From Haliotis rubra (lineage: Eukaryota): a stretch of 64,000 nt of DNA. This document shows positions 35,233 through 56,114 of the stretch, one piece after another. Position 1 is the stretch's first letter. The number at the start of each line of letters is the position of its first letter. A program made the position numbers and the translations under genes. A model generated the notes under the pieces. That model ran no database searches. It was not told the origin of the DNA and saw only the letters and a program-made list of their open reading frames with translations. The DNA is taken from NCBI RefSeq assembly GCF_003918875.1, contig NW_025767379.1, forward strand, positions 868,001-932,000, in the 5' to 3' direction.

Positions 35233-38200
35233 ATGGACGAGTTATTCGCGACAAACACGGGACCACCGGCGACCGCTGGCGATGGAGCGTTTGAGAGATT
35301 TCTTACAGCAGCTATTGCTGCTATCATTACTATTATGTTCTCATGGAGGTTACTCGCTACGGAGGAGAATGTTGGGGTGGGGAAGGTGCTGTGGGTGGGG
35401 CCCCTGTGTCCGTGGGGAGGGAAGTCCCCAAAGTTGTCATGAAGAAAGCCATTAAAATGGCAAAGGCTGCTGGATACACAGAAGAAAGTAAACAACTGGA
35501 AAAGGAACGGGGGCTCAGTGAGGAAGGTAAGAAAGATGATATAATCGGTAGCGGCTCAGGTATAAATACTGTGACGTCACCTGACCTACTTAGTGAACAG
35601 CTTATTACGTGCTGGGAAGAGAGGCCAAGATTAAATGACGACGAGGAGGGACTGTTAGAGAGGACAGAATTAAAGGGGCTCTCTACTGAGGCAGATATGG
35701 ATCTAGGGGTTAACGGATTTTCCAGGGGGAACCCAGAATATAGGGACATTCTTGATGACGACAGGTACCGTCCCTTTGAAGGAGGGGCGGAGTTCGGGGA
35801 CAACATTGAACCACGTGAATTAGATTCCGACGAGGAAATGTATTGTGGCACAATGCTTGAAACTATAATGGAGGAAGATTCGGATGACATGTGCAGCACC
35901 AGTACAGGCAGTGATGTCGATTCATTAGGGAGGACTGGGGAGTTTGGGTACTATGAGCTTAACGCCGAGGGGGATTATGAGGGGGATCATACTGAGGAAG
36001 GGGGTTGCACGGTGCACGTGATGGAGGATGGGTCTGAACTCAGTACTAATGTGATAACTATTGCTAGTGGTGCTACATGGCACGTAAGCGATGAATTCGG
36101 TGACAGTGTTTCGTATGACGAGACAGATATTGCTAGTTCTCGTGGGGGTGCAGACGACAGTTATGATGCGCAGAGAAAGAGTGCGCTGCTTCCGGGTGAT
36201 ACAGCAGACGATAGCAATTCTGATGGTAGCGACGAGTCTGTGGTAACTGTTGTAACTAGGCAACTATCTGAGGAGAAAGAAAGCCCTATAAATTCACAAG
36301 AATTCAAGCTTTACAAACACAGGCCAAATCGAAATTGTCCCCGTGAGAACACGCGCAACAAGTCAAGTTTTAAATGTTTCGCCCGTATCCGTTCAGTCCA
36401 CTTTCCAGGCCTTACAACCCGATGAACCGTATCCGACTGACGATCTACACTCGCCCGCTACCACATCAGGCATTGACGAGGGCTTACAAACTGAAAATTA
36501 TGCAGAAGCAACCGATATGCCGTCACCTTCACAGGACTCAGGGATCTATTCGATTGAAACTCGAGTAGACAACGAGCAAGTCCGCGGATCGCTCGAGGGT
36601 ATTGACGAACTTGAAGAAAAGTTCGATATCAACAGTAACGTTGATCCAAGTGCCAAAGAATCAGAGAATAATAGTGCTTCCAGGAATGCAAGCCGTGTGT
36701 TGAACATTGAGACAGTGAATAAGGAATCAGTGGAAACTGACGGTTCTGTAAATGAGAATGGAACGAGATTGGACATTGTGTATGGTGACATGAGTGGAGG
36801 AGATGATGTGCCTGATTATAAGGATGCCTATGTTTCGTCAGCTGTTGAAAAAACACCTAAAGGGTTTATTTTCTCTCGGTTTGAACTGGAAACCACCGAC
36901 TACGAGGAGAAGGTGTATACCACAGACAGAGCAACTCACACAGTTGTGGCCAAACTTGTTGCAGAGGAGAAGTTTGTTCCCACCGAGCAGACTGATGCCG
37001 ATATTCGTGAACAGTTTGCAAATCTGGGAGAAGGGGACAAGATTGAGACATCACCTCGGACATTTGCAAAGGCTGGTTCGTCTAGGGAAACAAACATTGA
37101 TGAAAACTTTGAAACAGATTCTGGGAGTCGACCTCTTATTCTAAGGCCTGATTCACCAGAGAAGAAACGGACGCATATAGCTACCGAATATAAACAAACA
37201 AACATTGCTGACCCTATGGGCGCTACCGAACGCCTTCAGCGCAACCAACATGAAACAAATATTGATGATCATGATGTGGTTAGATATCAAGACGCAGCAA
37301 GCCATGAAACAAACGGAATCACAAAACATTCATTAACTATGACAGGGTCTGCTGCTCCTCCCGAGAAGTTCCTAAGGATGGATAAGACGGATGGGTCCCG
37401 GTCCCATCGCATTGTGCCACTGACTAAGGAGACTTCTGATGCTGACAGAGTGATGAAGGCTGATGGAGGCAAATCTCGGGAGACAAACATCGGCGATACA
37501 GCAAGCATGGCTAAACGACTTTCATCCATCAGCCAAGGGGAATCTCCCCCTGAGAAAATACTGAGAATCGGCAGCAGCAAATCTCTAGAGACTCTTATTG
37601 ATGACAGTAAATCGTCAACGGCTCATTCAGGCACAGACAAAGGTCAAGGTCAACTCGGAACAGAGAGAACGTTGACGTTTGTCACTGAATCCCGGGAAAC
37701 AATAACAGATGCGAGGCATTCTTCCGAGTCTACAATGCCCCCCAAGCAGAGCCAAGAAACAAACATGGTAGAAGACAGACACCATATACCACAGACGCAG
37801 TCACGGGAAACGTTGATTGATGACCCCAGTGTCTCCTACCCTAAACAAGGAACTAGTAGCATCCACAGAACTGTGAATGTGCAAGACAGTGGTCATGGGC
37901 CCCGTGAAACACTTATTGATGATGTAGCTAGCACAGTGTCGCAAGAACTGAACACAAACAGAACATCTAAAGAGACACTCATTGATGATGTTCCAGCGCC
38001 CAAATTCCCCACTTGTTTACAAGATCGATCAGGGCAGAAAGAGACATCCAGAAGTAGGGAAACAGTGATTGATGACGTAGTCATCACAAACAAAACATCT
38101 AAAGAGACACTCATTGATGATGTTCCAGCGCCCAAATTCCCCACTAGTTTACAGGATCGATCAGGGCAGAAAGAGACATCCAGAAGTAGGGAAACAGTGA

Positions 38201-41200
38201 TTGATGACGTAGGCATCACTGTGTCGCAAGAACTGAAAACAAACAAAACATCTAAAGAGACACTCATCGATGACGTCCCAGTGCTGAAAATCCCCACTAG
38301 TTTACAGGATCGAACAGAGCAAAGAGAGACACCCAGAAGTAGGGAAACAGTGATTGATGATGTTGGTAGTACGTCAACTACTAGGTTTATGAATTCAGCA
38401 CCGATGACAGTTAAATTTCCTGCATATGGATCACGGGAAACACTGATTGATGATGTAGTTCCACAACAGATAGACGAGAAAATCGCCAGAGCTGAGTCCC
38501 GTGAATCATTAATTGATGAGATAGACATGGTGTTGTACGGACGTACTGACTACAAGATGAAGCCCATCGAAGTGCCACACGACATTCCTTTCCCTGATAG
38601 CGAACCAAGTCAGCAGATCTGGAAACCATCCCATGAAACAGTAGACAGTGGGTTGTTTTCTCATGGTGGACATCGTGAAACCCTCATTGATGATCCAGCT
38701 GTTCCAAGCATAGGGCTTAGTAAAGGATCGTCTGTAAAACAGGATACCTTCATGCACATTCCCGGAACACGGGAAACCTTGATTGATAATAAGCGTTTCA
38801 CATCAACTGAACACAAGTTTGGCCATGCAGGAGTTACAGACATGACTGATGGGACATTGAACGTTGGGACACCAGGAATATATGAAACTAACATTGACGA
38901 TGTGTCTGAAATAGTACTTCCTGAAAGAGTCTTGAACATAGATCAGGAAAATGTGACACGCTTCAGGAATAGAGCTTCCTTAAATCGAGACGGAAGCAGT
39001 GAAGGGTTGGATGAGAGTAATGGAAATGAACTTGATAAAAGTTTTGGTGATGTCACAAACAGAAGTGAGGACATGCTTGACGATGTGTCTGCTGACAAGA
39101 AAAATGATGCAGTCCATGAAACAGAGATTGATGCAGACGAAGATGAGGAAGAGTGGGTAGTAGATGAAGTAGTGCAAGACTTTACTATTATGACAGGGCC
39201 GGAAGGTCAGAAGAGTTTCATTCCTGGAAAGATGGAACACAGGATTATTCACGTATCCCCAGAACACATACCAAGCTTGCCTGAGGCTTCACAACCATCT
39301 TCGGATCCGACAGCCCAAACCTCACCTCAACATGTACAGACGCAGCAGCCCCAACAGGGCAAGGAAACAGAAATATCAATGGAGCCCATGCTGTCAGACA
39401 GGCCAACTCCGAAGCCAAGAAGAAGCCTGAGGTCAGAAAGTGGATTGGCAGAATCACCAGCTGCAGCTGATCATCACATGACTCCACAAACTACACCCCA
39501 GGTTGATCGTGACGGCAAACTGCACTTAGATGCAATAGATGAAGTGTCGTGGAAGCCATTAAGTGATTCTGTAAAGGCAGAGAACTCTCCTGCAGCTGTG
39601 AGAAAGTTTGTCATGGAAGATGTGATCATATCTGGCTCCCATCTCATCCCGCACCCAAGAAGACAGGTTTACAGCGAGGCTGACAAAAGTAACCCACTTG
39701 TTGCTATAAACTCTGGTGACATGGGTACCTATGGTACCAGGTCGAACCTGGCCCATCTTAGCAAAGACCTTGAATCAGAGGGTGACATTGACTTTGACAT
39801 ATTTGCCGGTGGTGTTAATGGTGCAGATGGTGTTGGCACTGTGATAAGGCCTGTGTCCGAATCTTCACCCAAGCATGGGGGAGAACAAGCAGTTGCTGAT
39901 GGCAACGAAAGCCCAGATGACTCGGGTTTTCCAAGTCCGGATGTTTCAAGGCAGATATTGGAGCAGTTCAAACGATCCAAGAGTGTGGAACATCTCCGAC
40001 GTAAATCATGGGGTATGGTAGAGGATGAGTCAGTCTTTATGCCCATGCAATCCAAGAAGCCTGACTCTCCAGTCATGTCTTCACCTGTGCAGAGTCCGCC
40101 AATAATTCCAGATTCCCCAGTTGTTTCCCCACCTTCAATGGCGTTTCTCATGTCCAAGAAAGGATCAAAGAGTGTTCCAAACCTTGCTGGAATTGACGAC
40201 TCGCCTTCCATCAAAGCACCTATCTCGCACACAAGAGAATCGGCAGCGATTGCTTCATCTCCAATAGTTCAAATGACACCAAAAGCTGGTGCTTCGCCAC
40301 TTACCAAGAAACCATCTCGCTATACTAAGAAGTATTCAACAACTGCTTCATCTCCTGTGATAAAAGCTGCTGCCAAGGCGAAGGCTTCAGATTCCCAGCA
40401 AACAACACGCCAGGTCATACACACGGACATAGATGACGTGGTGGATTCGGCAGCAGCTTCAGAAACAGCACAGCTCTCAACTGCAGGACCTATGTCAGCC
40501 TCTGTTGAAAAGAAATCTCCTTCTGAGACAACATTTTCGGCTGGAGTCGAGTCATCTCCTGTGATATCCCAATCGCCTGTGATAACCCAATCTCCTGTTC
40601 CCATGATACCTGCATCACCCATGATAAAACAGGCACCTGCTATAGTTCAGTCTCCCACAGTTCAGCTTCACAAGACTGAAACTAGATCGTCAGAATTTCA
40701 ACAGATTGATCAGTCCTCTGGTGTGACAATCTCAAAACGAGTTGAAGCAGCTCCTATCATATCAGCGTCACCAAAGATAGAAAGTCCTGTAATTATTAGT
40801 TCTCCTTCAGTGCAGATGACCAAGGACATGAGATCGTCCCAACCTGTCCACGCTCCTCCATTGATAGAAGAATCTCCTTCCATTCCAATATCACCCACAA
40901 TTAAGGCCTCAGAACGCATAGACGCGTCTCCATTTATCAGCTCTCCTTCAGTGAAGACAACCATGGACATGAGATCGTCTCAACCTGTCCACGCTCCTCC
41001 ATTGATAGAAGAATCCCCTTCCATTCCAATTTCGCCCACAATTAAGGCCTCAGAACGCATAGACGCGTCTCCATTCATAGAAGAATCTCCTTCCATTCCA
41101 GTGTCACCAGCTATCAAATCATCAGAACGAATAGATGCTTCACCAAGTATTTCTTTCCCAACACAATCCTCAACGATTCCACAATCTCCTACTCTCTCGT

Positions 41201-43870
41201 CTCCTTTGATCCCTGATTCACCAGTGATTCCCACTTCACCAACCATTCTACAATCACCGTCCTTGTCAGCACCGACAGCAGTACTTGCCTCGCCTACTGT
41301 TTCCATTCCAGACTCGCCAACAGTTTCAATGACCACTCCGCCAACTGCAGAAGACACGTCTTTCGAAGACCAATGGTCTTTTGGAAGCCAAAAGAAGCAC
41401 AGATCTCTTAAGGAGATTAAGAGAAAATTCTCCAGCAAGAACTTTAAATCTATGCAAATGCCACCCACACCAAACATCGGACAGTTTGTTGTACCTCACA
41501 AATCGGTGCTCACAGCCAGATACAAAATCAACGCTTACAGGAAAAGGTTCCTTAGTGAAGGCAATCTCCTGGATGATTCCGAGAGCCAACTCAATGACCA
41601 ATTTAATGAGCACAAAGAATCCCTAACAACAAAATACAAGTCCCCTCGCCGCCCGGGACAGAAAACCCCAAGCAGTTACCGCAGTCAGGATAACTTGGAG
41701 AGGTTCACTTTAGCCTATCCTAACTTCTTTTGGGAAGATTCAAGTGAAGGCAGACCTAGCATCGATGAACTTCACAAAAACTGCATTTTTACCCCAGAAG
41801 GCAGAAAAGATATTATGAACAAAACACTTTCAATTGAAAATTTGTCATTAGATCTTGGCGCTCATTTGAGACGCTATGGCTCAGTGACATCCTTATATGA
41901 GACTGACATTGATACGGGTGAAACATCTGAAACAATACCCTTCCCTGAAACTGATCTAGACCTTTGGTTCTCTTTGCAGCATCCAATAGAACGCGCTGTC
42001 AGTATGACGGACCTACGCAGTGAGCATTCCCACCGGATAGGGACAGGAAAGGGGAGATTTGCGCATCGTAATGTACCTAAGTCAAAGAGTCTTCAGACTC
42101 TTGAAACTAACCTCGATGATGAGGAAGATGAACTTAAGCGCGTACCATCAGTACATGAACTTCGTGTTACCAAATCCCTGTCTAAGTTAAATATACCAGA
42201 CTGGTTTAAGAACTCTAGCCTATCTAAGAGTGGTAGTTGTATGTTAAGGCATGGCTCCACATCAACAATGTCCTCATGGGGCTTCAACCCTAGTCTGACA
42301 TCATCTCCCTGCCCCTCTGTAACATCAACTGGAAATGTGGTTATCAAAACCCGTGTATCCCCTTCCAGTAGTATGAGACTTTTTAAATCCCCCAAGTTTG
42401 CCTCAGTACCAACCTTACCCAAAACCCCAGAAGAGAGACTACCTAAAGCACCCATTAAACTGCCTAGCGAAATGTTAAAGAAAAATGACAAACCAAAAGG
42501 TTTGGAAAAAATCCCAATAGTGCCTTTTGCTCAAATTAGGGCAATGTTTGAAGCCAAAGCAGCTAATGAACGAGCTAGAAAGAAGGACAGTGCAGTGCGC
42601 CAAGACTCCGTGTCATCAAAAGTTTCAATGAAAGCTGCGAGCCCTGTGCCTGTAGTGACTGTGTCCCCTAGTGAAATTGTTCTTCTTGAAAGTAGCCCAA
42701 AGCGACCAAGGAGTCCCCCCGTTATTGCCCCAGATCAAGCTAGAATTTCATATGCTCCAGTACTACAAAAGGGACCTTCAACAAATGCAGGAGACACTTC
42801 TCAACCATGGAGGCGACCACTGAGTCCGAGTACTGTAAGTCCTGTAAGTCCTCAAATGGGGCTTAGTCCCACTGAAACCACTATTCCTCAGAGAACTACG
42901 AGCCCGTTAGAATCAGCTGGTTCTCATGGATCCACAAGTCCCACGGCATCCACAAGTCCTCAAAGGCCCCTCAGTCCTGCTGAAAGCTCAAGTCCTAGAT
43001 CAATTAGTCCTCTTGGACCATTGAGCGGTCCAGAAGATGCAAACAGATCGTTTAGCCCTTCAGACAGGATGCGACCAATAAATCCAGACGGTCCTCATAA
43101 TCGGTCCATGAGTTCCACAGGATCTATGAGCCCTCCAAGGTCAATTAGCCCTGGGGGGATTCTCAGCCCGAGAGGATATAGTGCATATGGCAACAACGAG
43201 CAGCCAGCTAGCCCAGACAGCCCCCCACAAAGTCCAGTCGAAAAGGGTGGACCAAAGGGCATCCTTGGCCCAACAGTGAGATTCGTAGAGACAGAGAAAA
43301 TAGAAGTTAAGGATAACAAGCCTACAAAACCATCTGGTAAAAAGACAGACTTTTTCAAACGTTTGCAAGTGTTCCAACGGCCCGACAAAGATAAGAAAAC
43401 CAAAGCCGAAGACTCATCGAAATCCCCACCACAGAAACAGGTACCAGCCTCCAAGCTCAAATCTGCGTTTGAACCCTTCTCACGGAATTCCAAATCTATA
43501 GAATCTGCCCCAACAATTCAAGCCCCAAACTCTCGAGCAGTCCCTAAATCTCCCACGCGCACCGAAGCCGAAACCCAACTAGTGGAGGAAGCACCCGTGT
43601 TACAATCACCCAATTCACAATCTATAGAGTCCGCCCCCACCCTAAAAGCACCTTCCCGTATGGCACCAGAGCCCTCAAGGAACTCAAGTGAAATTTTCTC
43701 AAACGATCGCAATTCTCATACTCGGCAAGAGCCTCGCAATGGGGCTTCAGAGCCCCCGGCGAGTCCAGTCAGGGTAGGTAATCCCGGGCAGAGCCTGCCC
43801 ACGCCTGTGCTAACACCCACACCATTCTCTAGATCTTCAACGTCTGAAGAACAGAAACGAAGCATGAAAG
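35233..43870 (+). CDS. AJM1: giant coding exon of AJM1-like gene (acidic, S/P-rich, largely disordered); start uncertain (35233 or 35343); frameshift at ~36292-36340
   Basis: ORFs 35343-36425 and 36292-43926 overlap out of frame and have continuous composition; strong phase-1 donor AAG|GTAAGG at 43870. Linkage to the AJM1 exon is inferred from strand, position and splice phase. Confidence 0.72.
37945..38365 (+). repeat. coding tandem repeat (~42-46 aa x3): TSKETLIDDVPAPKFPTSLQDRSGQKETSRSRETVIDDV
   Basis: Visible at both nucleotide and protein level. Confidence 0.9.
40797..41145 (+). repeat. coding tandem repeat (141 nt / 47 aa x2 plus partial): DMRSSQPVHAPPLIEESPSIPISPTIKASERIDASPFI
   Basis: Units offset 40831 vs 40972. 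Confidence 0.9.
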
Positions 43871-44137
43871 GTAAGGTCTTGTTTTCTATATATTTTCACA
43901 GAACAGATAAAGTTGTGGTCAGTTGATAGACCATATGTAAATTACATAATGGATATTGATTCTCTTTAATCTCACTTGTCCTATTGTCTTTATGTGGTAT
44001 ATGCTTCTTTGCACATGCTTTTGTCTGAGATGGAGGTTTGTTAATATTGTGGTTATGTTTTTGTCGTAAAATCAGCTCATGTACTCCCGGGTGTGTTTCT
44101 AGGTTTGTCGAGGACCCTTATCGTGCTCTTGGGTTTC

Positions 44138-44292
44138 AGTGAGTGAGTATGGTTTTACGCCGCTTTTAGCAATATTCCAGCAATATCACGGCGGGGAACA
44201 CCAGAAATGGGCTTCACACATTGTGCCCGTGTGGGGAATCGAACCCGTGTTTTCGTCGTGACGAGCGAAAGCTTAGACCACTAGGCTACCTC
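44138..44292 (-). mobile_element. family-1 SINE
   Basis: Close match to the family consensus on the minus strand. Confidence 0.88.
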
Positions 44293-44343
44293 ACAGAACT
44301 CTCTTGGATTTTATCACAGTGGTAAACGTCTGAGACGCATCAA

Positions 44344-44587
44344 ACCCGTGATGTTCCAGGTTAGAATTGATCTTCAGTAACCCATGCTTGTCGTAAGAGG
44401 CGACTAACGGGATCGGGTGGTCAGGCTCGCTGACTTGGTTGACACATGTCATCGTATCCCAATTGCGTGGATCGATGCTCATGCTGTTGATCACTGGATT
44501 GTCTGGTCCAGACTCGATTATTTATAGACCGCCGCCATATAGGTGGAATATTGCTGAGTGCGGCGTAAAGCTAAACTCACTCACTCA
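44344..44587 (+). mobile_element. SINE family 2 with perfect 14-bp TSD
   Basis: CTGAGACGCATCAA at 44330-44343 and 44588-44601. Confidence 0.93.
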
Positions 44588-46458
44588 CTGAGACGCATCA
44601 ATTCGGATGCTCCTCTCGCTGATACCACTTGATATAACTCTGATTGCTAAAGTCAGCATTAAACCCAAATCACTCACTCACTCGTCCATTGAAGCATTTA
44701 CACTGTGACGTTCACCATCTTCCAACAATGGAGGTTCTAAGATTAACTTTCTTAATTCGATCTGATGTTTAATTTTCTGCCTCAGTCGCGATAGGGCTGC
44801 AATACTGCCGCTGTGGCTGTAAACATTAACTCACTCACTCTCTAATTTTCTGCCATGCTGAAATGGTCGCATCTTTCAATTACTGAGACTTCTCAGTGTT
44901 CATTGTGAGATTTGAATATCCCTGCTATGACCTTTGACCTTCTGAAACATGTGACAACATACTGCAGTCATGACAACTCTGAAAGGTCTGTTAATTATGA
45001 TGTACCCATGTGGATGAAACGTAAATATCAAATTACATCTCACCTCAGACTAACAGTAAATATGCGGTGTACAGAACTATGGGTTTGTTAAGACGCCCTA
45101 CTCGAAGTGCTCCCGCCATCCCTTGTATTGTGAGCCTAATGCGAGTGAGTGAGTGAGATGGGTTTAACTCCGCTTTGAACAGTATTACAGTTATATCGTC
45201 GAGTATCAGTAGAGTGTGGGAAGACAACGATGTCGGCCTCGAACGTCAACCCCTGTCTTGAAACCTATGAGCACGGGCATGGAGCTGTCAAACCTAGAAA
45301 CATAGACGAGGTAGACCGGAATTCGAACCCACCTTCATTAAATACTATGCACTGCTTTATCAGAACAAATCGAGAAAGCTGAAGTGCCTATTACATATTT
45401 TATTTTCGAAATTCTTTCACTTAGCTTCGCGTTTTCAAGGTGTTTAAGTGTATTGAGTGTACATTCTGAGAGCATAGCTTCTCTAGTCTAAAGGCTTGGT
45501 ATACACATAACACTATACAGGTCTTTAATTCTCATTAGCAGTGAAATCAGGATAAGATGTGCTAGTTTTCATCTGCAAAATCAAATTTGGAAAATGTATT
45601 TGTTTTTCCTTTTAGATGTATATTTCAAAGAGCCTATTTTGCAAAATAAGCATAGCAAAGATATACAATTCATTATTACAATGGCATAAATATTTCCTGC
45701 GTAGAAATATTAATGAACATCAGTGCATATTGTCAGTGTTTGTTCAGCTGTTTTTGTTGTTGTCAATTAATGTGATCAAGCGTGGAAACATTCCTATTAA
45801 CCAATACAGTTGTGTGGTTAGTGAATGTCACGATCTGGCTAATTGCAATTTGAGGCGTGTGATCTTCAAGTCGCTAGGTAGTTACGACTGAATGGCTTAT
45901 GTCACCAGAAATACGAATCAAATTTTATCCAAGTTCATTTTTTGTTCGATATCTCTTCCAACAACTGAAAAATGCTAAAATATTGCATTCGTTTTCTCGG
46001 TGTGCAGTCAGTATTGGATCCAGATGTCTTTATCTGTTGTTAAGCTTTTAGGACTTTGAAAATCATTTTCGCGATACAAAACCTGACATAATGTATTTTT
46101 CTGATTTGAGTACATGCTGTCTCTGTCTATGAATAGACCGCGATTAACAGCGAATTTCATCTAATATGAAAACCATGAATCCTAAAACGGTGACTGGATT
46201 CCATTGTGTTGTGGAACGGGTTCCAAGATTGTACATGGACATGTATCCAAAATCACAGGCCCTTTAATTTGTGATGCACATCTCATTAACTTCCCATAGA
46301 TTCTGACCAGTTGTTTTCTATGCCAGCGTCCTTCCTCTATACCTCTGCTATAACGCCACTGCACGTTACACACTACTGCCAAACAAACCACGGAAGCATC
46401 TCGTCCTGACACTTGCATAGCTGGACCTGCTTAACGCGTGGAGTCGGGTGGATGGATA

Positions 46459-46680
46459 CACGTGAGGACGCGAGTTAGGAATGGTCTTCAGCTAACCATG
46501 CTTGTCGTAAGAGGCGACTAACGGGATCGGGTGGTCAGGCTCGCTGGCTTAGTGTACCAATTGCGTATATAGATGCTCATGATGTTGATCACTGGATTGT
46601 CTGGTCCAGACTCGGACTATTTACAGACCCGCCGCGATATAGCTGGAAAATTGCTGAGTGCAGCGTCAAACAACACACAA
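46459..46680 (+). mobile_element. SINE family 2, internally deleted
   Basis: Core CTTGTCGTAAGAGGCGACTAACGGGATCGGGTGG present. Confidence 0.85.
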
Positions 46681-49275
46681 ATAGTCGGGGTGGAAGGTTT
46701 GCTTGTGGGGCAGTCGAATATAGCGCATTCACAAATACGACTGGAACCATGTAAATCACGAACTGTGTACTCGCGCCACGCACTGTTCCGCTGAAATGTT
46801 CCGTTTACACTCGGAAAACCTCGTGTCCAAAATGCGGTGCTTCTGTGGTTCGTTTTGCAGTAGTAGCTAGTATGTAGTACGTCGCACGAGCCCCGGTCCT
46901 GCATGTGGAAGGTAGGTATATATAACTGCAGTAACTGGACATAGGATGCCTTGTAAGTATCTAACCAATCTATTTCCTGAACCCCAAGTAATCTCAAGCT
47001 GTGCAGCCGCTGATGTATCTGCACCATGGTGATGGTAATGGCAGTGCAAGGTGTCGCTCGCCCTGCGGCGTCGTGGAACGGCCTACACGACGTGAAGTAG
47101 GGCTGACGTCGCATTCAAGATGACTGCACATGGCAACGTGCATGCACGTGTTTATTTGGGATAAGTCTGGTGTTATAGCGAGATAACACCGAGATACCAT
47201 GCCTCAGTTTAAACATAAATAACCCAATAACAAACAGTAAAATTACTCGGAGCCGACCGGTCCCTGTTTAATTCCCGTCATATCTTGCGCCAGGAAGGGC
47301 AACAACAAATAGCATGTTTTAGCGTAATGCGGTATGCCGGACCCCACGTCCTGCTTTCTGGTCACGCGGTTTAGCTTTATCCACTAGACAACAGTGTAGG
47401 CATCTCGATGACATAATAACCGTGTATACTAGATTATATAATTATATGACTAATAAATTGAATCAACATCGACGTAATAATTGTCACAACCACAACTTGT
47501 AAATATACGAATAAGTAAATAATGTTAAGAGCATTCTGTGTTTATAAAGGTTATCGCATCTCAGTTCTATTACATGACAAATACCCCGGGCACATTCGTC
47601 ACTAAAGCTTCGTTTTCAATCGAGTTTGCATGTCACGACTGTGCAATCACATTAATCTGTTCATCTTGAAACGAGATCATATCTTGTTCTCGATTCACCT
47701 TGTTTTGTGCCGTTTCAAAGTAGGCTATAGTGTATAAGTAATATACATATTTCTCTACCCAGTTTTAGACACCCCATTCGCTCTTCACGATAAACCTGCG
47801 TTCGATTCCCCACATGGTTACAATGTGTGAAGCCCATGTCTAGTGTCCCCCGCCGTGAAATTGCTGGAATATTACTAAAACTTAACTCATTCACTCACGT
47901 GTACTTTCATTGTGTTACTGGTTGTGGATTTCAGACATGAGTGAGTGAGGGAGAGCAATAGGACAGATTGGGATGATGACATCACTTCTGAAACGACATT
48001 ATGGCGCGGACGAAACTATGAAACGAAACGAAACGAAAATTCCGCGCTCATTATAAAAATACAATAGAGATGCACAGGATGGGCGTGGATGAATTATTAA
48101 TTACTTCTGATTTTCATTATTCAACTGATATATGATAAACAGAATCAGACGGTCACAGTGAGAGACTAGGCAAATAGCATACTGGGCTTCATTACTATAA
48201 AATAAGCTGTAACGGTTTCTCGTATATATTACAATATCCAAATAAAACCAGATTACAGCAGTGTTTGACAGTGCATGGAATAAGATAAGTTATTTAAAAA
48301 TGAAAAACTTTAATCAGATAAGTTTGTCTCAGAATGAATTCTTCACATAAGTCCAGAACATCGATTGTATATGCATCTCGGCACAGCGTGACATGTGTGT
48401 AATCAATGACGTGTGTATACTTCGTGTGTATGTGCAAACACTGGCATACAGCCACAACCTGCATCACGAACATTTGTGTTTGTTCAGAATCAGTTGCAAT
48501 CTGTCTGTCTGTAGGCAGGGCACATCGTATCGTGTTTGAACAATAATCACAGCGGATCATCAATGTGAAAATAGCTCGAGATACAGCGCTATCGCCCACC
48601 ATGAGCATGTGTGGCAGCTTAACCACATGTACGCTGAAACCCCGATATAACGCCTCGAATATATTGTTGAACAAATTATTTGGATGGATTATTTGTTTAA
48701 GGACCTCCATCAGTCTTTGCTTATATGCCATGCGCTTTATAACACTTAACCGTGGATTCATCAGTGATCAGTGATTCATCTGGTGGTCAGGCTCGTCGAC
48801 TTCGTGGACATTTTGACGTATTTTGTCACCTTACACGTCCTAAATGCATGTTTTTCGTTTGAAAAATAGAAATATGTTTCTTTTTCACATGGGAATTCTA
48901 TTATGGGGGTCTGTATTCTCCATGTGGGACATTGTCGTGCGTGAAATAGAATGGATATATCAGTATGTCTGTCGGAAACTACTGACACATCAAAACAGAT
49001 CGCGACAAGAGTTGGTCTATGGGCATCGTAAATACACGTTTACCAGAATGGCCTAAAGCGACGGAATTTGCTTTGCAGAGTTGTGTCTCTTAACTGTGCT
49101 AGGATCTGCTAATCATAGGTTTTGTTCAACAAACACTTGTCACTTTATTGCAGTAATATGACCGGTTCATATTGTTTTTCCGAATGACCAAACGTTCACA
49201 TCGCCTGTTATCCCAGTTCTGTGGTGAGAGAGGGGTATTTCCTATGACATGTCAAGGTACAATATAATTATTAGG

Positions 49276-49442
49276 GGGGCGGTGGGGTAGCCTAGTGGTT
49301 AAAGCGTTGGCTCGTCACGCCGAAGACCCGGGTTCGAATCCCCACATGGGTACAATGTGTGAAGCCCATTTCTGGTGTCCCCCGCCGTGATGTTGCTGGT
49401 ATATTGCTAAAATCGGCGTAAAAAACAAACTCAGTCAGTCAG
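49276..49442 (+). mobile_element. family-1 tRNA(Asp-like)-derived SINE, young copy with TSD
   Basis: TAGCCTAGTGG A box, GTC anticodon-like loop, GGTTCGAATCCC B box; TSD tataattat(t/c)agg at 49263 and 49443. Confidence 0.93.
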
Positions 49443-50288
49443 TATAATTATCAGGTCACCAAAACAGAATGCCAGGCATGCACTTGTTGCTCCTTGCGTA
49501 CAATACGCAAGATACGCCCAATGGATACTTTAAAGGTAGCTCAAAACATGAACATTAACTTTGTTTAGGAATAATAAAACTAAAGTCTCAAGCCTTTGTT
49601 ACTGACAGACAACGCTGTATACACAGGACAGGTAGTTGTGCGGGGCCAGGTGATTCATGGCTGGGACATGTAAATTACACCTGGCAAATATGTCAGGAAC
49701 TTTTATCTTCTGACAATGACCCAATTTCGATACAGGTGTAAAACATTGCCGATACCTGCTGGGAAATAGGTAAAGAGACGCTGTGTGTTATTCTAGATGG
49801 CTGTAACTACTGGTTCACATCTTATGATAGATATAAAGAGCGATTGAATTGTGTTTTGTGCCGCCTTTAGCTATACTCTAACAATACCTCGGCGGTGATG
49901 AGGGCGGGATACCAGAAATGGATTTATTGGATTTCACTCAATGATATCATATGGGGAATAGAACCCGACCTGTAGAACGCTTTCCACAAGGCTATTTCGC
50001 CGTCGATATGAGATGTATAGGTGCAGATGACCCAATTGGAAGGGTACTCAAGTAACTATTGCTACTAGGCGTTCATGTAATATATCATTTGATGACCATT
50101 TTCGGTTTCTGTAGAAATAAAGTTGAACAAAACGAAGTGTATTTCGTAACAGACTTCAAACATGAGGATAAATGCTATTTCATGTCGGAATGTGTGCTAA
50201 GCGGTGATTACCTTGTACACTATACATATACACCTCTGAAGATCCCGGATCAGAGTTGGTCGTCGTTGTTCGCTCACATATTTAACGG

Positions 50289-50570
50289 ACCCGTGAAGAT
50301 CCGGGGTCGAATAGGTCTTCAGCAAGCCATGCTTGCCACAAAAGGCGACCATGCTTGTCGTAAGAGGCGACTAACGGGATCGGGTGGTCAGACTCGCTGA
50401 CTTGGTTGACACATGTCATCGGTTCCCAAATGCGCAGATCGATGCTCATGCTGTTGATCACTGGATTTTCTGGTCCAGACTCGATTATTTACAGACTGCC
50501 GCCATATAGCTGGAATATTGTTCAGAGCGGCGTAAAACTAAACTCACTCACTCACTCACTCACTCACTCA
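50289..50570 (+). mobile_element. SINE family 2 with duplicated core segment
   Basis: ACCCGTGAAGATCC head; ccatgcttg..aggcgac occurs twice; (CACT)n tail. Confidence 0.88.
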
Positions 50571-50691
50571 CAAATTAAACGAGAGCATGTGGTAGTCCCG
50601 TGTTTCAAGCATTTGGTGTTCAAGGTTCGACTCTATAGAGGTAACATGGTGTAAAGGTTGTCTCAGCCTATACGTGTTTGCCTTCCGAATT

Positions 50692-50844
50692 GAGCGAGAG
50701 AGTATAGTTTTTATGCCGCTTTTAGCAATATTCCAGCAATGTCACGGCGGGGAACACCAGAAATGGGCTTCACACATTGTACCCATGTGGGGAATCGAAT
50801 CCGGGCCTTGGGCGTGATGATCGAACGCGTGCACCACTAGGCTA
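50692..50844 (-). mobile_element. family-1 SINE
   Basis: Match to the family on the minus strand. Confidence 0.85.
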
Positions 50845-50848
50845 ACAA

Positions 50849-50851
<3 letters not shown>

Positions 50852-50915
<64 letters not shown>
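50852..50915. repeat. (CA)n microsatellite
   Basis: About 32 CA units. Confidence 0.98.
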
Positions 50916-50916
<1 letters not shown>

Positions 50917-51054
50917 AAATTGAAACAGGATTCATATATTATCGAGATAAAACCCCGCATATGATTATATGATATAACAGTATAGTATAACAGGAAACTT
51001 TTGTTGACATATGAGGTGATTCAGTGGACTGGTGTTTCAGGCTCGGTGGCTTGA

Positions 51055-51240
51055 CTGGCGTCTGTAAATAATCGAGTCTGGACCAGACAATCCAATGATC
51101 AACAACATGAGCATCGATCTGCGCAATTGGGAACCGATGACATGTGTCAACCAAGCCAGCGAGCCTGACCACCTGATCCCGTTAGTCCCCTATTTCGACA
51201 GGGCATTGTTAAAGAACAATTCTATCCCGATCTTCACGCG
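51055..51240 (-). mobile_element. SINE family 2
   Basis: Reverse complement of the family body. Confidence 0.82.
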
Positions 51241-52691
51241 TTTGAAAACTAGGGTGTGCCAAGTCGACCCGCTCAACATACACGCCTCTTGCCCTTATGA
51301 CGCAACGCCATTGCAGCAGTCAAACATAAACCTGTATCTGTTTATAAGCACAGATTGTTAATACAGTTTTTATTACCCAGACAGGTGTGTACATGTCCCA
51401 AGGCACGAAGGAGTTGCTGACAGTATCACATGACAATCTAGCGCACTTGCACTGTAAGCACTTCGAGAGGAACAAAGTGTGGTCTGATTCAGTATTGAAC
51501 ACACCTGGTTAACTTGTTCTCAGCTACAGCGTGGGGCGTGTTATTGGATTGTATGTATATTGGTTTCAGTTTCACAGTGCACCTACACACAAACACAAGC
51601 TCTATGCATGACTTGTTTTTAAAAATTACAGCCTGGAAACACGGAAACAAAGTTGTCATAGCAACTACAATGTAGTCATATCAACCGACTTAATGTTGAA
51701 TGTGCATTTCTTATAAAATAGAAAAGAATACTATTGAAAAAATACAGTTCGCTCGACATTTTAAACTTTACGATGTTTATAAAGGGCTTTTCGTGAAATT
51801 CCTCAACCAAGAACTAGGTACAGTGTAGGGGTCTCTATAACGGCCTTTCGCTCGAGGAGCACACAGTTTCTGGCATGACGTGTCATAACATTGCGATTAA
51901 CGCTATGTGGTATTATTCATACTGATATAAGCCGACCGCCTCTCGTTCTTTGGCTGGAAGTATTCACGGCCGGTCATGCGAATCTTTCATTGAATACGCT
52001 AACACTAACTGCAGTCAGGGCCCAGGGCGATACGACTGTACCAAGTGATGTGTCAGCAAGTTTGTTCAATCGTTAAGAGGCTTTTGCAAGCGTCATTAAC
52101 ACCGCGGTATATCGGGGTGATTGAATGAATTGATGAGAAGGTCGATGTGTTTGGTTGCATATCCAACGGTTTTCAACACGTGTAGAACATTCCTTTGACT
52201 TTAGTATTCCGTTAGAGAGAATAAAATTCAAATTTAAACCATTTGCGTGAATGGATACGGGATATTGAATTTATTAATACACGAAGTGTAGACATTGTGT
52301 GCCTTTGTGTGGAGGACTATATATGGCCTCGTAAACATACATCGTTATATAACGTTATTATAGATAGATGTTCCGAGTATTGCCACTGACAATATAATTA
52401 AAGTACATTACTCATGTTCGACAACAGCGTTAATGTAGCGTGTGACATAACTGAAATATATTCAGCCTGTGTCATCATTAGTGAATATAAAATGTACAAG
52501 CTAGCGACTGAAATACACACCGACAGGTGTTGGAATCAGTTGAGCAGTAACGAACATTGTAATATCTATACAACCGAACAATTACATCCGATATCTAAAT
52601 AAAAATAATAATAATCAATTAAAAAGTGTGGGACATTTTACCAATGATGTGTTGTAACAAACATTAACAGAGATCAAACGGATTCACGTTA

Positions 52692-53029
52692 GGCCACATA
52701 AGAATAAAATCTTTTTGGTTTCACATTACCACTCGAACTTAACATTTGGCCCGACCCTATTTTTTTATATTTTGTTAATATTTTTGCACTCGTAAATGTG
52801 CGTGTATAAAGCCTGCAGGCTTCCGAAATTCGTCTCAGCTTGCGGCATTACAGGTTTTCGACTAAGATTGTATAAGTTCTTTGAAGTTGTTCCATAAAAC
52901 TTACTTTTCCTTAACATTGTATAGAAAATCAGAAAAAAGTATTAAAAGATAAAAATAAAATCCACTCTACCTACCCATTTAAAAAAAAAGAAAAACTGAT
53001 GAGAAACCAGAAATATATTTTATGTGGCC
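52692..53029. mobile_element. MITE, PIF/Harbinger-like
   Basis: TIR GGCCACATAA/TTATGTGGCC; TTA on both sides (52689-52691, 53030-53032). Confidence 0.7.
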
Positions 53030-53456
53030 TTATTTGTGATGTGTACATAACATGATAATTAGATAAGAACCTTTGTCCTGTACAGGAAGTTCATCTATAA
53101 AGACTGCTGGTAACATATGATACTGTTATTGCAAACGTTATTCAAACGGAAACCAAACAAACATAATCCGATTATTTGCCATGTGTTTGTAACACAACAT
53201 TATAATATAGGGACACACCTTGTCCTCAGCAGGTAATATATCGTTACGGCCGCTGTAAACACGTGACAGTGTCACATGAATGCACGCCAAATCTTAGGTA
53301 TAAATATTTAGCCTTTAGGTCGGCTTTGGAGATGTAACATTTTAATGCAGGCTAGGTTATTTATCGCGTAGCCAGATGAATAGTTATGTATGCCTGAGGC
53401 GGAGATTTATGGTTCTGTAATGGATTTCCACATCATCGCGACAACTATGCTGTCAG

Positions 53457-53539
53457 GCCGACTTCCGGCGGCGTCCGTCACGTCCACAGTGAGCCTGGTG
53501 ACCAGCGACCGTGACCTCGTCACCAGCACGTGTTTCTAA
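53457..53539 (+). CDS. candidate alternative terminal exon of AJM1-like gene (GRLPAASVTSTVSLVTSDRDLVTSTCF*)
   Basis: CAG acceptor at 53456; phase 1 matches the donor at 43870; GC3-rich open frame inside an AT-rich intron. Confidence 0.45.
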
Positions 53540-53994
53540 TGCCGCTCGTGTTATTAACTCACAACGCCGTGTTATGAACATATTTTCTTGAAGTATAAGA
53601 CTTTGTCGTGAACATAAACGTATGTTTGGAAGATATAGAAAGATAATACACCTGAAAATATGTTAAGCACCAGTACCACTTTCGGATATCTCGTAGTTTC
53701 TTATACCTGTTGAAAATAGCTGCTGATGTTATTGATGTCGATAGGTGTGAAATGATTGTTTGGATGCCAGCTGTCCGGCTGGGACAAGCTGACTGAGGGT
53801 GTCTCACCTTGGTGGATGTGCTTAGTCAGCAGTAACAGCTGTCTGTTGCCATGGTTACAAAACATTCGCAAAAATTGTCTTTATGTAATTAATTTATGTT
53901 AATGTAATTCATTATGGTTACGTTACTTAGAAAGCAAAGAAAATGTTTGTCAGATAATTAATACAGCCTTCGGTATAAGAACATAAGTTGACTG

Positions 53995-54122
53995 TGACTG
54001 AGTTTGGTTTTACGCCGCTTTTGCAATATTCCAGCAACATCACGGCGGGGACACCAGAAATGGGCTTCACACATTGTACCCATGTGGGGATTCAATCGCG
54101 TGAGGTTGCCCCACCGCCCGCC
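53995..54122 (-). mobile_element. family-1 SINE, head partly deleted
   Basis: Body and tail match. Confidence 0.8.
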
Positions 54123-54800
54123 ACACATGAAAATATATGACAGTTCTAAGTTTCAGGTGTATTATGTGTAATGTGTTTTCTTTCCGATCGCTGAACACGC
54201 GCAGTCATGATTATAGATGAAGTAAAATATGTATAATATATTTTGAAGTTGTATGCAAAGATAGTCGATTTTCAAAAGTACTTCTCCAACGCGTCAGAGC
54301 TTGTTTGTAAATCTAACGTTCGATGAAAATCCGGGTTCGTTTTCTCACGTTCGTAAAAATATATGAAGTTATTTGTAGTGTTTTCCGTGTCATGTTGTTG
54401 TTATAACACATAATATTTGCTCACTCACGAGGATAAATCTGATGGGATATCTTAATTTTGTTGGCCCCGATCCCAGTTTCTGTGACGGTAAACGTGCGTG
54501 GTAATTGTTTAATGATTATTATTTTTCATTTAACACTAAACATTTATCCGGGACATGTGACTTTACCTTTTCCATCATGAATAATTTCCCTAGACAACGA
54601 AATCATTTTGCAACAATGTACTATTATTCATTGCATGGGTAATGGGTGCATGGTAATGTGTTTCTGCACCAAGTTATTTATCTGTTGTTTTGACTGCATC
54701 AGTAAACAGAATAACACTAGTGCCTACTAACATCTCGTACTCTGCTGATGTTTAATACATCCCACTGTTACTCACGTGACCTAAATGTTTATGCTTTCAG

Positions 54801-56114
54801 AAACCACGGTATAGCGAGGAGGTGTGTGTAGGTACTCGTCACAATCGACTCGGAGATTCCCGTTTGTTTCTGACCTTGGCTAAACATTCCGATCCACAAT
54901 CGCCGAAACAAGTCTCGTTCGATGATGGCGATGACGTCACAGCTGATGACGTCATGGACAGATCTGGAATTCTGGGAAATGCCAGCGTCGAAGAAGTGTT
55001 GGAGGGATTTCTTTCTTTCGGTAAACGCCCAGTTCGTGAACAACTTGTATCGAATCCTGCTGTTTTCGAAGGAAATGGCCACGCATTATTTCCAAGGACT
55101 GGATCGGAGGCAGGGTGTAACTATTATTCCAAGAATGGAGAGAGAGATGTATGTGATTTTTCGATTGAGGATTCCGTGTCAGTAAACTGTGACAACCAAG
55201 CCTGTGTGAATTCTCTTCCTTTGAAAGAAGCCAAGAAATCGTACAAACTGTGCCCGTATTGCTACACCTACTACTGCAGCAGGCTTTGTAGGAAGCTTGA
55301 TTTCGAGGCTCATAAACAGAAATGTCACCATAGCAACGTAAACAGCGCGTGCAAACACATCATGGTTAAAATTAACAAAGACCCCAATATGCAGTATCGG
55401 TATTCCCGATTAGCCAGATTGGGATATACGTCACATGGTCGGGGGTGTTTGGTTCTGTATATCCCGGACTTGTTTAATGCTGAACGATATCTACACGATC
55501 CTGATAGTAGCAAATTTTCTCCAGTTTTCGTGCCTCTCAAAGCTCTCACCAGCTCCGAGAAGTTTGGTAAAATGTTGCCATACGTGATTGACATGTGTAT
55601 TCAATGTAACCCTGCTGTCAAGTATGTGATGCATGTGTCGGTGGGGGTGGGGTCTGCCTTGGAACAAATCCCCCCTCCCAGGAGTACGGATCCCCTTATC
55701 CAAAAGTGCGCCAAGCTGAGTCTCAGCCCAGCTCATGATCTCACGGATCTAGAGGATCATAACAATATCACGCTCCTTGCTGCCTCCACAGAACGAGCAA
55801 ATGACAGACAAGATACCAGAGAGGCAAGGGAAGCAAGCTTCATGGACATTCAACGGAAGTTACGTCATAGCGGAGTTAACCTACGTCACGAGTTCCCAGA
55901 CAGTTATAACAAATTGATAGACTTCGTAGCAGACGGAAGAACATTTCCACCTCAGATTATCTCCCCTGTTGACTCCAAATCGGGCGAAGGATTTACCTGT
56001 GTCATTGTACCCGAAACGGAAACGGAAATAGAATGGGTGCAGGCTCAAGAGTTCCCACCAGATATAGACCTGTCAACGGACGACCGGTGTCCTACTTCAC
56101 CAACCTCCCCATAA
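54801..56114 (+). CDS. AJM1: terminal exon encoding the conserved apical junction component 1 (AJM1/C9orf172-type) C-terminal domain
   Basis: CDNQAC...CPYCYTYYCSRLCRKLDFEAHKQKC MYND-like finger, then SRLARLGYTSHGRGCLVL and IQRKLRHSGVNLRHEFP, matching AJM1-family motifs as I recall them; acceptors at 54800 and 54831. Confidence 0.85.
   Translation, partial: KPRYSEEVCVGTRHNRLGDSRLFLTLAKHSDPQSPKQVSFDDGDDVTADDVMDRSGILGNASVEEVLEGFLSFGKRPVREQLVSNPAVFEGNGHALFPRTGSEAGCNYYSKNGERDVCDFSIEDSVSVNCDNQACVNSLPLKEAKKSYKLCPYCYTYYCSRLCRKLDFEAHKQKCHHSNVNSACKHIMVKINKDPNMQYRYSRLARLGYTSHGRGCLVLYIPDLFNAERYLHDPDSSKFSPVFVPLKALTSSEKFGKMLPYVIDMCIQCNPAVKYVMHVSVGVGSALEQIPPPRSTDPLIQKCAKLSLSPAHDLTDLEDHNNITLLAASTERANDRQDTREAREASFMDIQRKLRHSGVNLRHEFPDSYNKLIDFVADGRTFPPQIISPVDSKSGEGFTCVIVPETETEIEWVQAQEFPPDIDLSTDDRCPTSPTSP

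What the first reader, a model, noticed from the sequence alone, without database searches (positions are those of the whole stretch)
43861..54840. AJM1-like gene: competing 3' splice sites 31 nt apart switch between a PDZ-ligand tail (ETTV*) and the whole AJM1 domain
Seen: the giant exon ends in phase 1 (ATG AAA G|GTAAGG, 43870). The strongest acceptor (TTTCAG, 54800) is out of frame with the AJM1 domain and gives G|AA ACC ACG GTA TAG = ...SMKETTV*. A second acceptor (GTGTAG, 54831) gives G|GT ACT CGT, in frame with the ~427-aa AJM1 domain. Established: E-T-x-V-COOH is a canonical class I PDZ-binding motif, and nematode AJM-1 works with the PDZ scaffold DLG-1. Inference: one exon is entered in two frames, toggling a junction protein between a PDZ-anchored form and a zinc-finger-domain form.
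Basis: partly seen in the sequence, partly recalled or inferred. Interest (0 to 1): 0.78.

Follow-up and report, generated by a model that had tools for sequence, protein, structure and literature searches.

The report
Abalone AJM1 gene, two-frame last exon

Summary
The window is Haliotis rubra LOC124257707, an AJM1-family gene.

- **ETTV tail is real.** The join 43870→54801, giving ...SMK-ETTV-stop, is already in RefSeq for four Haliotis species. RNA-like contigs of two abalone species fit it. The ETTV end is conserved in gastropods, bivalves and cephalopods. All four variable bases of its 14 nt are silent in the ETTV frame and change the amino acid in the AJM1 frame.
- **AJM1 ORF is still used.** It is under purifying selection within Haliotis (omega 0.16-0.19), so it must be translated.
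- **The proposed switch is not supported.** No data show use of the AG at 54830-31. It has a weak pyrimidine tract and three other AGs lie before it. A frame-restoring AG is expected by chance in 79% of shuffles, and Patella has none.
- **Relatives set the frame on the 5' side, with one acceptor.** Bivalves and cephalopods keep or remove a short coding intron (92-473 nt, 2 mod 3). Patella uses an upstream phase-0 donor.
- **Haliotis route unproven.** The best candidate is a conserved phase-0 donor-like site, AGG|GTAGGT, with exon end at 43773.

The parts
35233..43870 (+). Giant coding region of the gene. It starts at ATG 35233, carries the conserved N-terminal hydrophobic helix at about 35284-35355, and is mostly disordered. 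The last uninterrupted frame runs from 36343 to the exon end at 43870 (phase 1).
   Evidence: ORF list. tblastn of the H. asinina protein and of bivalve giant ORFs. 100% match to H. rubra XP_046547792.1.
43771..43779 (+). Candidate alternative 5' splice site AGG|GTAGGT, exon end 43773, phase 0. Joined to 54801 it would give ...SPVR|KPRYSEEV..., the AJM1 domain in frame. Its use is inferred, not shown.
   Evidence: It is the second-best donor-like site in the whole 7.5-kb exon and the best in phase 0 (score 7.77 against 11.2 for 43870). It is identical in H. rubra, H. rufescens and H. asinina. Patella uses an upstream phase-0 donor in the same way.
43868..43876 (+). Main 5' splice site AAG|GTAAGG, exon end 43870, phase 1.
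   Evidence: Sequence. RefSeq proteins of four Haliotis species end ...MKETTV. The RNA-like contigs start matching at 54799, which fits an upstream exon ending in AG.
43871..54800 (+). 10.9-kb intron, rich in repeats. Read-through stops after 18 codons. There is no conserved island and, in 50500-54798, no RNA cover apart from repeats.
   Evidence: Identity to the H. rufescens and H. asinina introns is 66-88%, against 90-98% in exons.
54781..54800 (+). Acceptor 1: pyrimidine tract plus CAG. This is the acceptor used in all the evidence found.
   Evidence: pyrimidine share 0.65. The CDS end of the RefSeq gene falls at 54814.
54801..54814 (+). The 14 nt that, with G 43870, read E-T-T-V-stop. The same bases read K-P-R-Y-S in the AJM1 frame.
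   Evidence: The four variable bases among nine loci are all third positions, or the third base of the stop codon (TAG/TAA), in the ETTV frame, and all second positions in the AJM1 frame.
54826..54831 (+). It is present and conserved within Haliotis, but its use is not shown.
   Evidence: Pyrimidine share is 0.29, and three other AGs (exon starts 54815, 54819, 54822) lie before it.
54801..56114 (+). AJM1-frame ORF: a linker, then a MYND-like zinc finger, then the Ajm-1 and AJM1_C domains. The stop is at 56112-56114 and the first ATG at 54954.
   Evidence: Translation. Pfam PF26649 and PF27982 on record. omega is 0.16-0.19 against 1.1-1.4 in the control frames. RefSeq lists a separate 386-aa protein at 54954-56114.

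Best explanation
This is the Haliotis rubra orthologue of a lophotrochozoan AJM1-family gene. The protein has an N-terminal hydrophobic helix, a giant disordered region and a C-terminal AJM1 domain.

In molluscs the last exon is read in two frames. When the phase-1 donor behind ...K-K/M-K is joined to the exon, its first 14 nt read E-T-T-V-stop. The protein then ends in a class I PDZ-ligand-type tail and the domain ORF is left out of frame. When the exon is entered in phase 0, the same bases read K-x-R-Y-x and the AJM1 domain follows.

The choice is made on the 5' side of the intron, with a single acceptor:
- Bivalves and cephalopods retain or remove a short coding intron (an exitron, length 2 mod 3).
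- The limpet Patella chooses between a phase-0 and a phase-1 donor 166 nt apart.

In Haliotis the intron has grown to about 11 kb and the ETTV mRNA dominates. That step is shown. The AJM1 ORF is still under purifying selection, so it must be made from a minor or conditional mRNA. The most likely route is the conserved phase-0 donor-like site at 43773 joined to the same acceptor at 54801. That last step is inferred, with odds of about one in three on its own.
For: ETTV form in Haliotis:
- RefSeq models of H. rubra X1/X2, H. rufescens X1/X2, H. cracherodii and H. asinina all end ...MKETTV.
- The H. rubra CDS ends at 54814.
- Three RNA-like contigs from two abalone species cover only the exon and repeats. 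They break from the genome at 54799 and carry 0.9-2.8 kb of other sequence upstream. The same studies hold the end of the giant exon.

Phylum-wide conservation:
- 23 proteins end in ETTV. The named ones come from 5 bivalve, 4 gastropod and 2 cephalopod genera.
- The base changes in the 14 nt are silent only in the ETTV frame.

Switch on the 5' side:
- 17 domain-bearing proteins read through the donor as ..K-G-K.., then run through a conserved ..LHAL..DGE.LFEFLQ motif into K.RY.
- The L002 intron is 128 nt. L001, L003 and L004 are the spliced forms.
- Mercenaria RefSeq X1 and X2 show both forms.
- Patella X1 and X2, with the DNA, show two donors and one acceptor.

AJM1 ORF still selected in Haliotis: omega 0.16-0.19.

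Candidate donor at 43773.
Against: - No read, contig or annotated isoform shows the 43773→54801 join in any Haliotis.
- The site is not at the same position as the Patella donor. The Patella bases matching it read AGG TTAGGT, which is not a donor.
- Its conservation may simply reflect coding constraint.
- The contigs show only the dominant isoform.
- The letters upstream of 54799 were not printed, so the donor in the RNA contigs is inferred from a 2-nt overlap and from the RefSeq models.
- Retained-intron contigs of bivalves could be genomic DNA. Translation of the exitron rests on its conserved peptide and on RefSeq models.
- In 54801-54953 the changes are 2 synonymous to 7 non-synonymous, which is not what a constrained coding linker shows.
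Confidence: 0.6

Rival explanations
1. Donor 43870 is joined either to 54801 (ETTV-stop) or to the AG at 54830-31 (exon start 54832). The second join gives ...SMK-GTRHN... and the AJM1 domain.
For: The AG is in the right phase and is conserved in H. rubra, H. rufescens, H. asinina and L005. The first 47 nt of the exon are nearly invariant among Haliotis species (1 change in 47), which could reflect splicing signals. This route needs no second donor.
Against: - No RNA or annotation evidence supports it.
- Pyrimidine share is 0.29 against 0.65 for acceptor 1.
- It lies 31 nt behind a strong CAG, with three other AGs in between.
- A frame-restoring AG occurs by chance in 79% of shuffles.
- Its position is not conserved in bivalves (offsets 40, 49, 67), and Patella has none.
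- In bivalves the codons between the stop and such AGs are under purifying selection in the AJM1 frame (ENGFAEQ with silent changes).
- All documented domain isoforms start the exon at its first base.
Confidence: 0.13
2. In Haliotis the AJM1 domain is made as a separate 386-aa protein from ATG 54954. It would come either from its own transcript or from the ETTV mRNA by reinitiation 140 nt behind the stop.
For: RefSeq lists exactly this protein in H. rubra (P0001). The ATG has a good context (G at -3, G at +4) and aligns with a Met in Patella. The 153 nt before it evolve with omega near 1 and a low dS of 0.058 against 0.257. That pattern fits a conserved leader better than a coding linker.
Against: The RNA contigs run on upstream across the splice site and show no start near the exon. 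There is no RNA cover or conservation in the adjacent intron that would mark a promoter. Reinitiation after an ORF of about 2,900 codons is not expected in eukaryotes (established knowledge). H. rufescens, H. cracherodii and H. asinina have no such separate model among the hits.
Confidence: 0.2
3. The ribosome shifts +1 at GUA-UAG-C on the ETTV mRNA and reads on into the AJM1 domain, in the way antizyme is made.
For: The AJM1 frame is +1 relative to the giant ORF, and the stop lies directly at the overlap. The ORF is selected although it is out of frame in every known Haliotis mRNA. Silent-site divergence behind the stop is low.
Against: No stable structure lies behind the stop (z +0.65 and +0.93). 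Relatives solve the same problem by splicing. The stop codon varies among TAG, TAA and an inferred TGA, and the codon before it varies between GTA and GTT. A tuned shift site would not be expected to vary like this.
Confidence: 0.03
4. The AJM1 ORF in Haliotis is a relic that is no longer translated, as in Biomphalaria, where the domain is gone from this locus.
For: Biomphalaria keeps only the ETTV exon. Its AJM1 frame stops after 7 codons and no domain lies within 6 kb. The Haliotis domain is the most divergent of the molluscan ones (45% identity to bivalves). No domain-bearing Haliotis isoform is on record.
Against: The ORF is intact in four Haliotis sequences and carries an in-frame 12-nt insertion. 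omega is 0.16-0.19 against 1.1-1.4 in the other frames.
Confidence: 0.03

Closest known systems
Exitrons: introns inside protein-coding exons whose retention keeps the frame (Marquez et al. 2015, PMC4484396, found)
   Same: In bivalves and cephalopods the segment between the donor and the AJM1 exon is short (92-473 nt), open in frame and encodes a conserved peptide. Non-molluscan relatives have a similar MMFEFLRK stretch in one continuous protein. Removal changes the protein end.
   Different: The length is 2 mod 3, so removal shifts the frame on purpose into a 4-codon tail with a stop. In Haliotis and Patella the segment has become an ordinary long intron, and retention is no longer productive.
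GRIN1 (GluN1) C2/C2' tails
   Same: Splicing near the 3' end removes the first stop and opens another C-terminal tail (PMC3958896). From my own knowledge, the C2' tail ends in a PDZ ligand (-STVV).
   Different: There two short tails are exchanged. Here a 4-residue PDZ-type tail is exchanged for a folded domain of about 430 residues, and the two readings overlap on the same 14 nt.
CDKN2A (INK4a/ARF), one exon read in two frames depending on the upstream exon (my own knowledge)
   Same: The frame of a shared exon is set by what is spliced to it upstream.
   Different: In CDKN2A both frames run through a long shared stretch and come from two promoters. Here one frame ends after 14 nt and both forms share a promoter and 2,400-3,000 upstream codons.
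Tandem or nearby alternative 3' splice sites
   Same: Two AGs 31 nt apart (31 is 1 mod 3) would shift the frame.
   Different: Use of the second AG is not shown. It has a weak context and is not conserved in relatives.
C. elegans AJM-1 with DLG-1
   Same: Both are junction-associated proteins that carry the same family name.
   Different: DLG-1 binds AJM-1 by its L27 domain, not by a PDZ domain (PMC8664570). A PDZ-ligand isoform has not been described, going by my searches.

Membership tests
AJM1 family (Pfam PF26649 Ajm-1 + PF27982 AJM1_C) | Significant matches to both family models in the C-terminal ORF | tested here: met
   Hits on record for the window's own 386-aa protein, without a weak mark. 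phmmer finds 312 relatives, 103 of them at E<=1e-30. My local Pfam copy lacks these two models and gave only a sub-threshold zf-MYND hit.
AJM1 family | Domain at the C-terminus of a long disordered protein with the GAFERFLT...FSWRLL N-terminal helix | tested here: inconclusive
   This holds for many relatives. In Haliotis the helix, the giant region and the domain lie in one locus, but no mRNA joining them in frame is on record.
Class I PDZ-binding C-terminus | Free C-terminus with S/T at -2 and V/I/L at 0 | tested here: met
   E-T-T-V followed by a stop. It is conserved, with the variants ETVV and an inferred ETTL.
Class I PDZ-binding C-terminus | Binding to a PDZ domain | not testable with these tools
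   Needs a peptide pull-down or an affinity measurement.
Alternative 3' splice-site pair | Both acceptors used in mature RNA | tested here: inconclusive
   Only 54801 is seen. Contigs cannot exclude a rare form.
Alternative 3' splice-site pair | Second site conserved in relatives that make both products | tested here: not met
   Patella makes both products with no AG in the first 80 nt of the exon. Positions differ among bivalves.
Exitron | Intron inside coding sequence, open in frame, retained form coding | tested here: not met
   In Haliotis the intron is 10.9 kb and read-through stops after 18 codons. The feature is met in bivalves and cephalopods.
Alternative 5' splice sites with frame switch (Patella type) | Two donors in different phases joined to one acceptor, both in annotated mRNAs | tested here: inconclusive
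   Met in Patella vulgata. In Haliotis there is only a conserved candidate at 43773.
Programmed +1 frameshift | Conserved shift site and a stimulatory element | tested here: not met
   No structure beyond shuffles. The stop codon and the codon before it vary among relatives.

The most novel reading that the evidence does not exclude
In abalones, and perhaps in other gastropods with a long intron, the AJM1 domain is under clear purifying selection yet out of frame in every known mRNA. It may be produced from the ETTV mRNA itself by a non-canonical translation event: a +1 shift at GUA-UAG-C, or termination followed by reinitiation at AUG 54954. The unusually low silent-site divergence of the 153 nt behind the acceptor would then reflect the signal for that event.
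Probability: 0.05. Interest if true: 0.85.

Novelty: new member of a known kind. Interest (0 to 1): 0.45.

Why it matters
A junction-associated scaffold protein would exist in two forms that share about 2,400-3,000 residues. One ends in a PDZ-ligand-type tail and the other in the folded AJM1 domain. The choice is written into a 14-nt stretch that codes in two frames and has been kept since the split of gastropods, bivalves and cephalopods.

The locus also shows how one switch can be rebuilt during evolution. An exitron in clams and octopuses became alternative donors across a long intron in a limpet. In Biomphalaria the domain is absent from this locus.

There is a practical gain too. RefSeq splits the locus in H. 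rubra into two genes and lists no domain-bearing isoform in any abalone, so the annotation is probably incomplete. The interest is real but local to molluscan cell biology and splicing evolution.

Tried and rejected
- **Local Pfam scan of the two ORFs.** No AJM1 models in that copy; only a weak zf-MYND hit.
- **tblastn of relatives' linker peptides against the window.** No LFEFLQ-like exon in the intron.
- **Conservation scan of the intron against H. rufescens and H. asinina.** No island above intron level, so a conserved cassette exon that restores phase 0 is rejected.
- **The 'third terminal exon' at 53457-53539.** No RNA cover in three RNA-like runs and only about 72% identity.
- **Word searches for a domain-bearing Haliotis protein.** None at 240-765 aa or 1,380-4,390 aa. 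The full HMMER search gave only the 386-aa protein as the Haliotis representative.
- **Scan of JGI metagenome contigs for the exon edge.** No match.
- **RNA folding behind the stop.** Not more stable than shuffles, so no support for a frameshift stimulator.
- **The TTTTGCAG|AA site 40 nt into the clam exon as a conserved second acceptor.** Rejected because L003 has CTG there, and the codons before it are under selection in the AJM1 frame.
- **Read laying.** It printed neither the loose-end letters at 54799 nor the minor joints, so isoform ratios could not be obtained.


Full report
**1. The observation.**

- The giant ORF (36343..43926, + strand) carries ...AGC ATG AAA G followed by GTAAGG, so the exon ends at 43870 in phase 1.
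- TTTCAG ends at 54800. Entered in phase 1, the next exon reads G|AA ACC ACG GTA TAG, which is ETTV-stop.
- GTGTAG ends at 54831. Entered in phase 1 at 54832, the exon is in frame with the ORF that ends with the stop at 56112-56114.

The domain frame is open from 54780, so a phase-0 entry at 54801 also gives the domain (KPRYSEEVCVGTRHN...).

**2. What the locus is.**

The window is Haliotis rubra.
- The giant ORF is 100% identical to XP_046547792.1, LOC124257707 isoform X2.
- The C-terminal ORF carries Pfam Ajm-1 (PF26649) and AJM1_C (PF27982) on record.
- It also has a MYND-like zinc finger and 312 relatives in a full HMMER search.
- Many relatives are proteins of 2,000-3,800 residues with the same N-terminal helix (GAFERFLT..FSWRLL) and the domain at the very end. 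The linked form is therefore probably the ancestral one (inference).

**3. The ETTV form is real, dominant and old.**

*Annotation.* RefSeq proteins of H. rubra (X1, X2), H. rufescens (X1, X2), H. cracherodii and H. asinina all end ...MKETTV. The H. rubra CDS ends at window 54814.

*RNA.* I laid the contigs of four runs on 50500-56499.
- X15 covers every bin and crosses the acceptor, so it is DNA.
- X1 (organism A) and X5 and X8 (organism B) cover only the exon and repeats.
- Their single long contigs (6,620, 3,412 and 4,850 nt) stop matching at 54799.
- Each carries 2,826, 922 or 1,950 further letters that lie nowhere in 50500-54798. They are spliced RNA.
- A boundary at 54799 rather than 54801 is what an upstream exon ending in AG gives. 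The exon at 43870 ends ...AAAG. One ending at 43773 (...AGG) would give 54800.
- Runs of the same studies hold the last 2.8 kb of the giant exon.

*Other molluscs.* 23 proteins end in ETTV.
- Bivalves: Mercenaria, Ruditapes, Mya, Tegillarca, Mytilus.
- Gastropods: Haliotis, Patella, Littorina, Biomphalaria.
- Cephalopods: Octopus, Argonauta.
- One protein ends in ETVV, and one ETTL end is inferred.

*DNA.* Nine loci carry AAAC[C/G]AC[G/A/T]GT[A/T]TA[G/A]. All four variable bases are silent in the ETTV-stop frame. All four are second codon positions in the AJM1 frame (P/R, R/Q/L, Y/F, S/N/K). Selection on these 14 nt therefore acts on the ETTV reading.

**4. How relatives reach the domain frame.**

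*Retained short intron.* Every domain-bearing molluscan protein found except two, Patella X1 and the Solemya model noted below (17 proteins), reads through the donor as ..K-G-K. The Gly-Lys is the GGTAAG of the splice site. It then continues for 30-157 residues and ends ..LHAL..K.K.DGE.LFEFLQ directly before K.RY.
- In L002 this segment is an intron-like stretch of 128 nt, from G|GTAAGA to TTTTTACAG|.
- L001, L003 and L004 are the same region with the segment removed. There the giant ORF ends ..KK-ETTV-stop and the AJM1 ORF follows in the +1 frame.
- Mercenaria RefSeq has both forms, X1 and X2.
- The inferred segment lengths are 92-473 nt, all 2 mod 3.
- The encoded motif is conserved between bivalve orders and in a cephalopod-like protein. 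Non-molluscan relatives have a similar MMFEFLRK stretch in one continuous protein.
- This is an exitron. Kept, it gives the domain form. Removed, it shifts the frame into ETTV-stop.

*Solemya.* One annotated protein of Solemya velum (P0035) enters the exon as ...GVAK-KRRYS without the G-K read-through or the LFEFLQ motif. I did not check its DNA.

*Two donors in Patella.* In the limpet Patella vulgata, RefSeq X1 (2,902 aa, with domain) and X2 (2,499 aa, ETTV) are identical up to residue 2440. The DNA shows the following:
- a phase-0 donor, GTC AAT|GTAAGT;
- a phase-1 donor 166 nt further on, AAA G|GTGAGT;
- one acceptor, CATTTCAG|AAA CGA CTG TAT AA.
- There is no AG in the first 80 nt of that exon.

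*Conclusion.* In those domain forms whose splice sites could be read, the frame is set on the 5' side and a single acceptor is used.

**5. The Haliotis case.**

- The intron is about 11 kb in three abalone species. It has no island above intron-level identity (66-88%), and read-through stops after 18 codons.
- The AJM1 ORF is nevertheless kept. It is intact in H. rubra, H. rufescens, H. asinina and L005, with an in-frame 12-nt insertion.
- By the Nei-Gojobori method, omega is 0.19 and 0.16, against 1.1-1.4 in the two control frames. The ORF is therefore translated.
- No domain-bearing abalone isoform is on record. RefSeq lists the ORF from ATG 54954 as a separate 386-aa protein.

- The real donor scores 11.2.
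- The next best site is AGG|GTAGGT with exon end 43773. It scores 7.77, is in phase 0, and lies 97 nt upstream.
- It is identical in the three species.

Joined to 54801, this site gives ...SPVR|KPRYS... and the domain. By analogy with Patella I take this as the most likely route, but it is unproven. It is also not at the same position as the Patella donor.

**6.

The AG at 54830-31 is conserved within Haliotis, but so is everything in 54801-54847.
- Its pyrimidine share is 0.29, against 0.65 for acceptor 1.
- Three other AGs lie between the two sites.
- 79% of shuffles of the first 60 nt hold a frame-restoring AG.
- In clams such AGs lie at varying offsets. The codons in front of them (ENGFAEQ) show many silent changes and few replacements, so they are translated.

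Its use cannot be excluded, because contigs show only the main form. Nothing supports it.

**7. Other routes.**

- A +1 frameshift at GUA-UAG-C has no structural support (z +0.65 and +0.93), and the site varies among relatives.
- A separate start at Met 54954 remains possible. The 153 nt before it show 2 silent and 7 replacement changes, and a dS of 0.058 against 0.257 in the domain. That pattern looks more like a conserved leader than a coding linker, but the counts are small.
- In Biomphalaria the ETTV exon remains while the AJM1 frame stops after 7 codons, and no domain lies within 6 kb.

**8. Function.**

ETTV-COOH fits the class I PDZ-ligand pattern (established knowledge). Binding is untested. 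The nematode precedent does not speak for a PDZ link, because DLG-1 binds AJM-1 by its L27 domain (PMC8664570). I found no paper on molluscan AJM1 isoforms.

**9. Verdict.**

The two-frame exon and the ETTV tail are real, conserved and already annotated. The proposed competition between two 3' splice sites is not supported, and the evidence from relatives points to a switch on the donor side.

**10. Limits.**

- Only contigs were available, not reads.
- The donor matrix was approximate.
- Retained-intron contigs of clams may be genomic DNA.

Noticed in passing
window 35370-35376 and 36307-36311: Against the H. asinina protein, the H. rubra assembly changes reading frame twice (frame 1 to 3, then 3 to 1). 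These are probably 1-nt assembly errors or real indels. They would explain why the RefSeq H. rubra proteins start at an internal Met (MPSPSQDSG...) and lack the N-terminus.
   Followed up: partly
window 35284-35355: A conserved N-terminal hydrophobic helix (GAFERFLTAAIA.IITIMFSWRLL) is found in molluscan and many non-molluscan relatives. It may be a membrane anchor of the giant protein.
   Followed up: no
window 54801-54953: Silent-site divergence between abalone species is about four times lower here than in the domain (dS 0.058 against 0.257), while omega is near 1. This hints at a constraint on the RNA or DNA rather than on the protein.
   Followed up: partly
window 54954-56114: RefSeq annotates the AJM1 ORF of H. 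rubra as a separate 386-aa protein, 140 nt behind the ETTV stop on the same strand. The locus is probably one gene.
   Followed up: yes
window 50700-51300 and 53900-54100: Very high contig depth in all four runs, DNA and RNA alike, with many joints between these places. These are copies of an abundant, transcribed repeat inside the intron.
   Followed up: no
window 53457-53539: The 'third terminal exon' noted earlier (STCF-stop) has no cover in three RNA-like runs and only intron-level identity to H. rufescens (about 72%).
   Followed up: partly
window 54927-54953: Two TGACGTCA palindromes (CRE-like), the second overlapping ATG 54954. They arise from repeated Asp-Asp-Val codons. Only the second is perfect in H. 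rufescens, so this is probably chance.
   Followed up: no
L010 (Biomphalaria glabrata) about 24841-24855: The ETTV exon is kept (TTTCAG|AAACGACTGTTTAA), but the AJM1 frame stops after 7 codons and no AJM1 domain lies within 6 kb. The domain seems lost from this locus.
   Followed up: partly
proteins P0026-P0030 (bivalve domain forms): The domain-bearing forms of one bivalve group themselves end in ..TDTFV or ..TDSFV, another T/S-x-V end. Both isoforms may carry PDZ-type tails there.
   Followed up: no
protein P0081 (417 aa): A domain-only AJM1 relative that starts MGNQSS.., which fits an N-myristoylation consensus. Its taxon is unknown.
   Followed up: no
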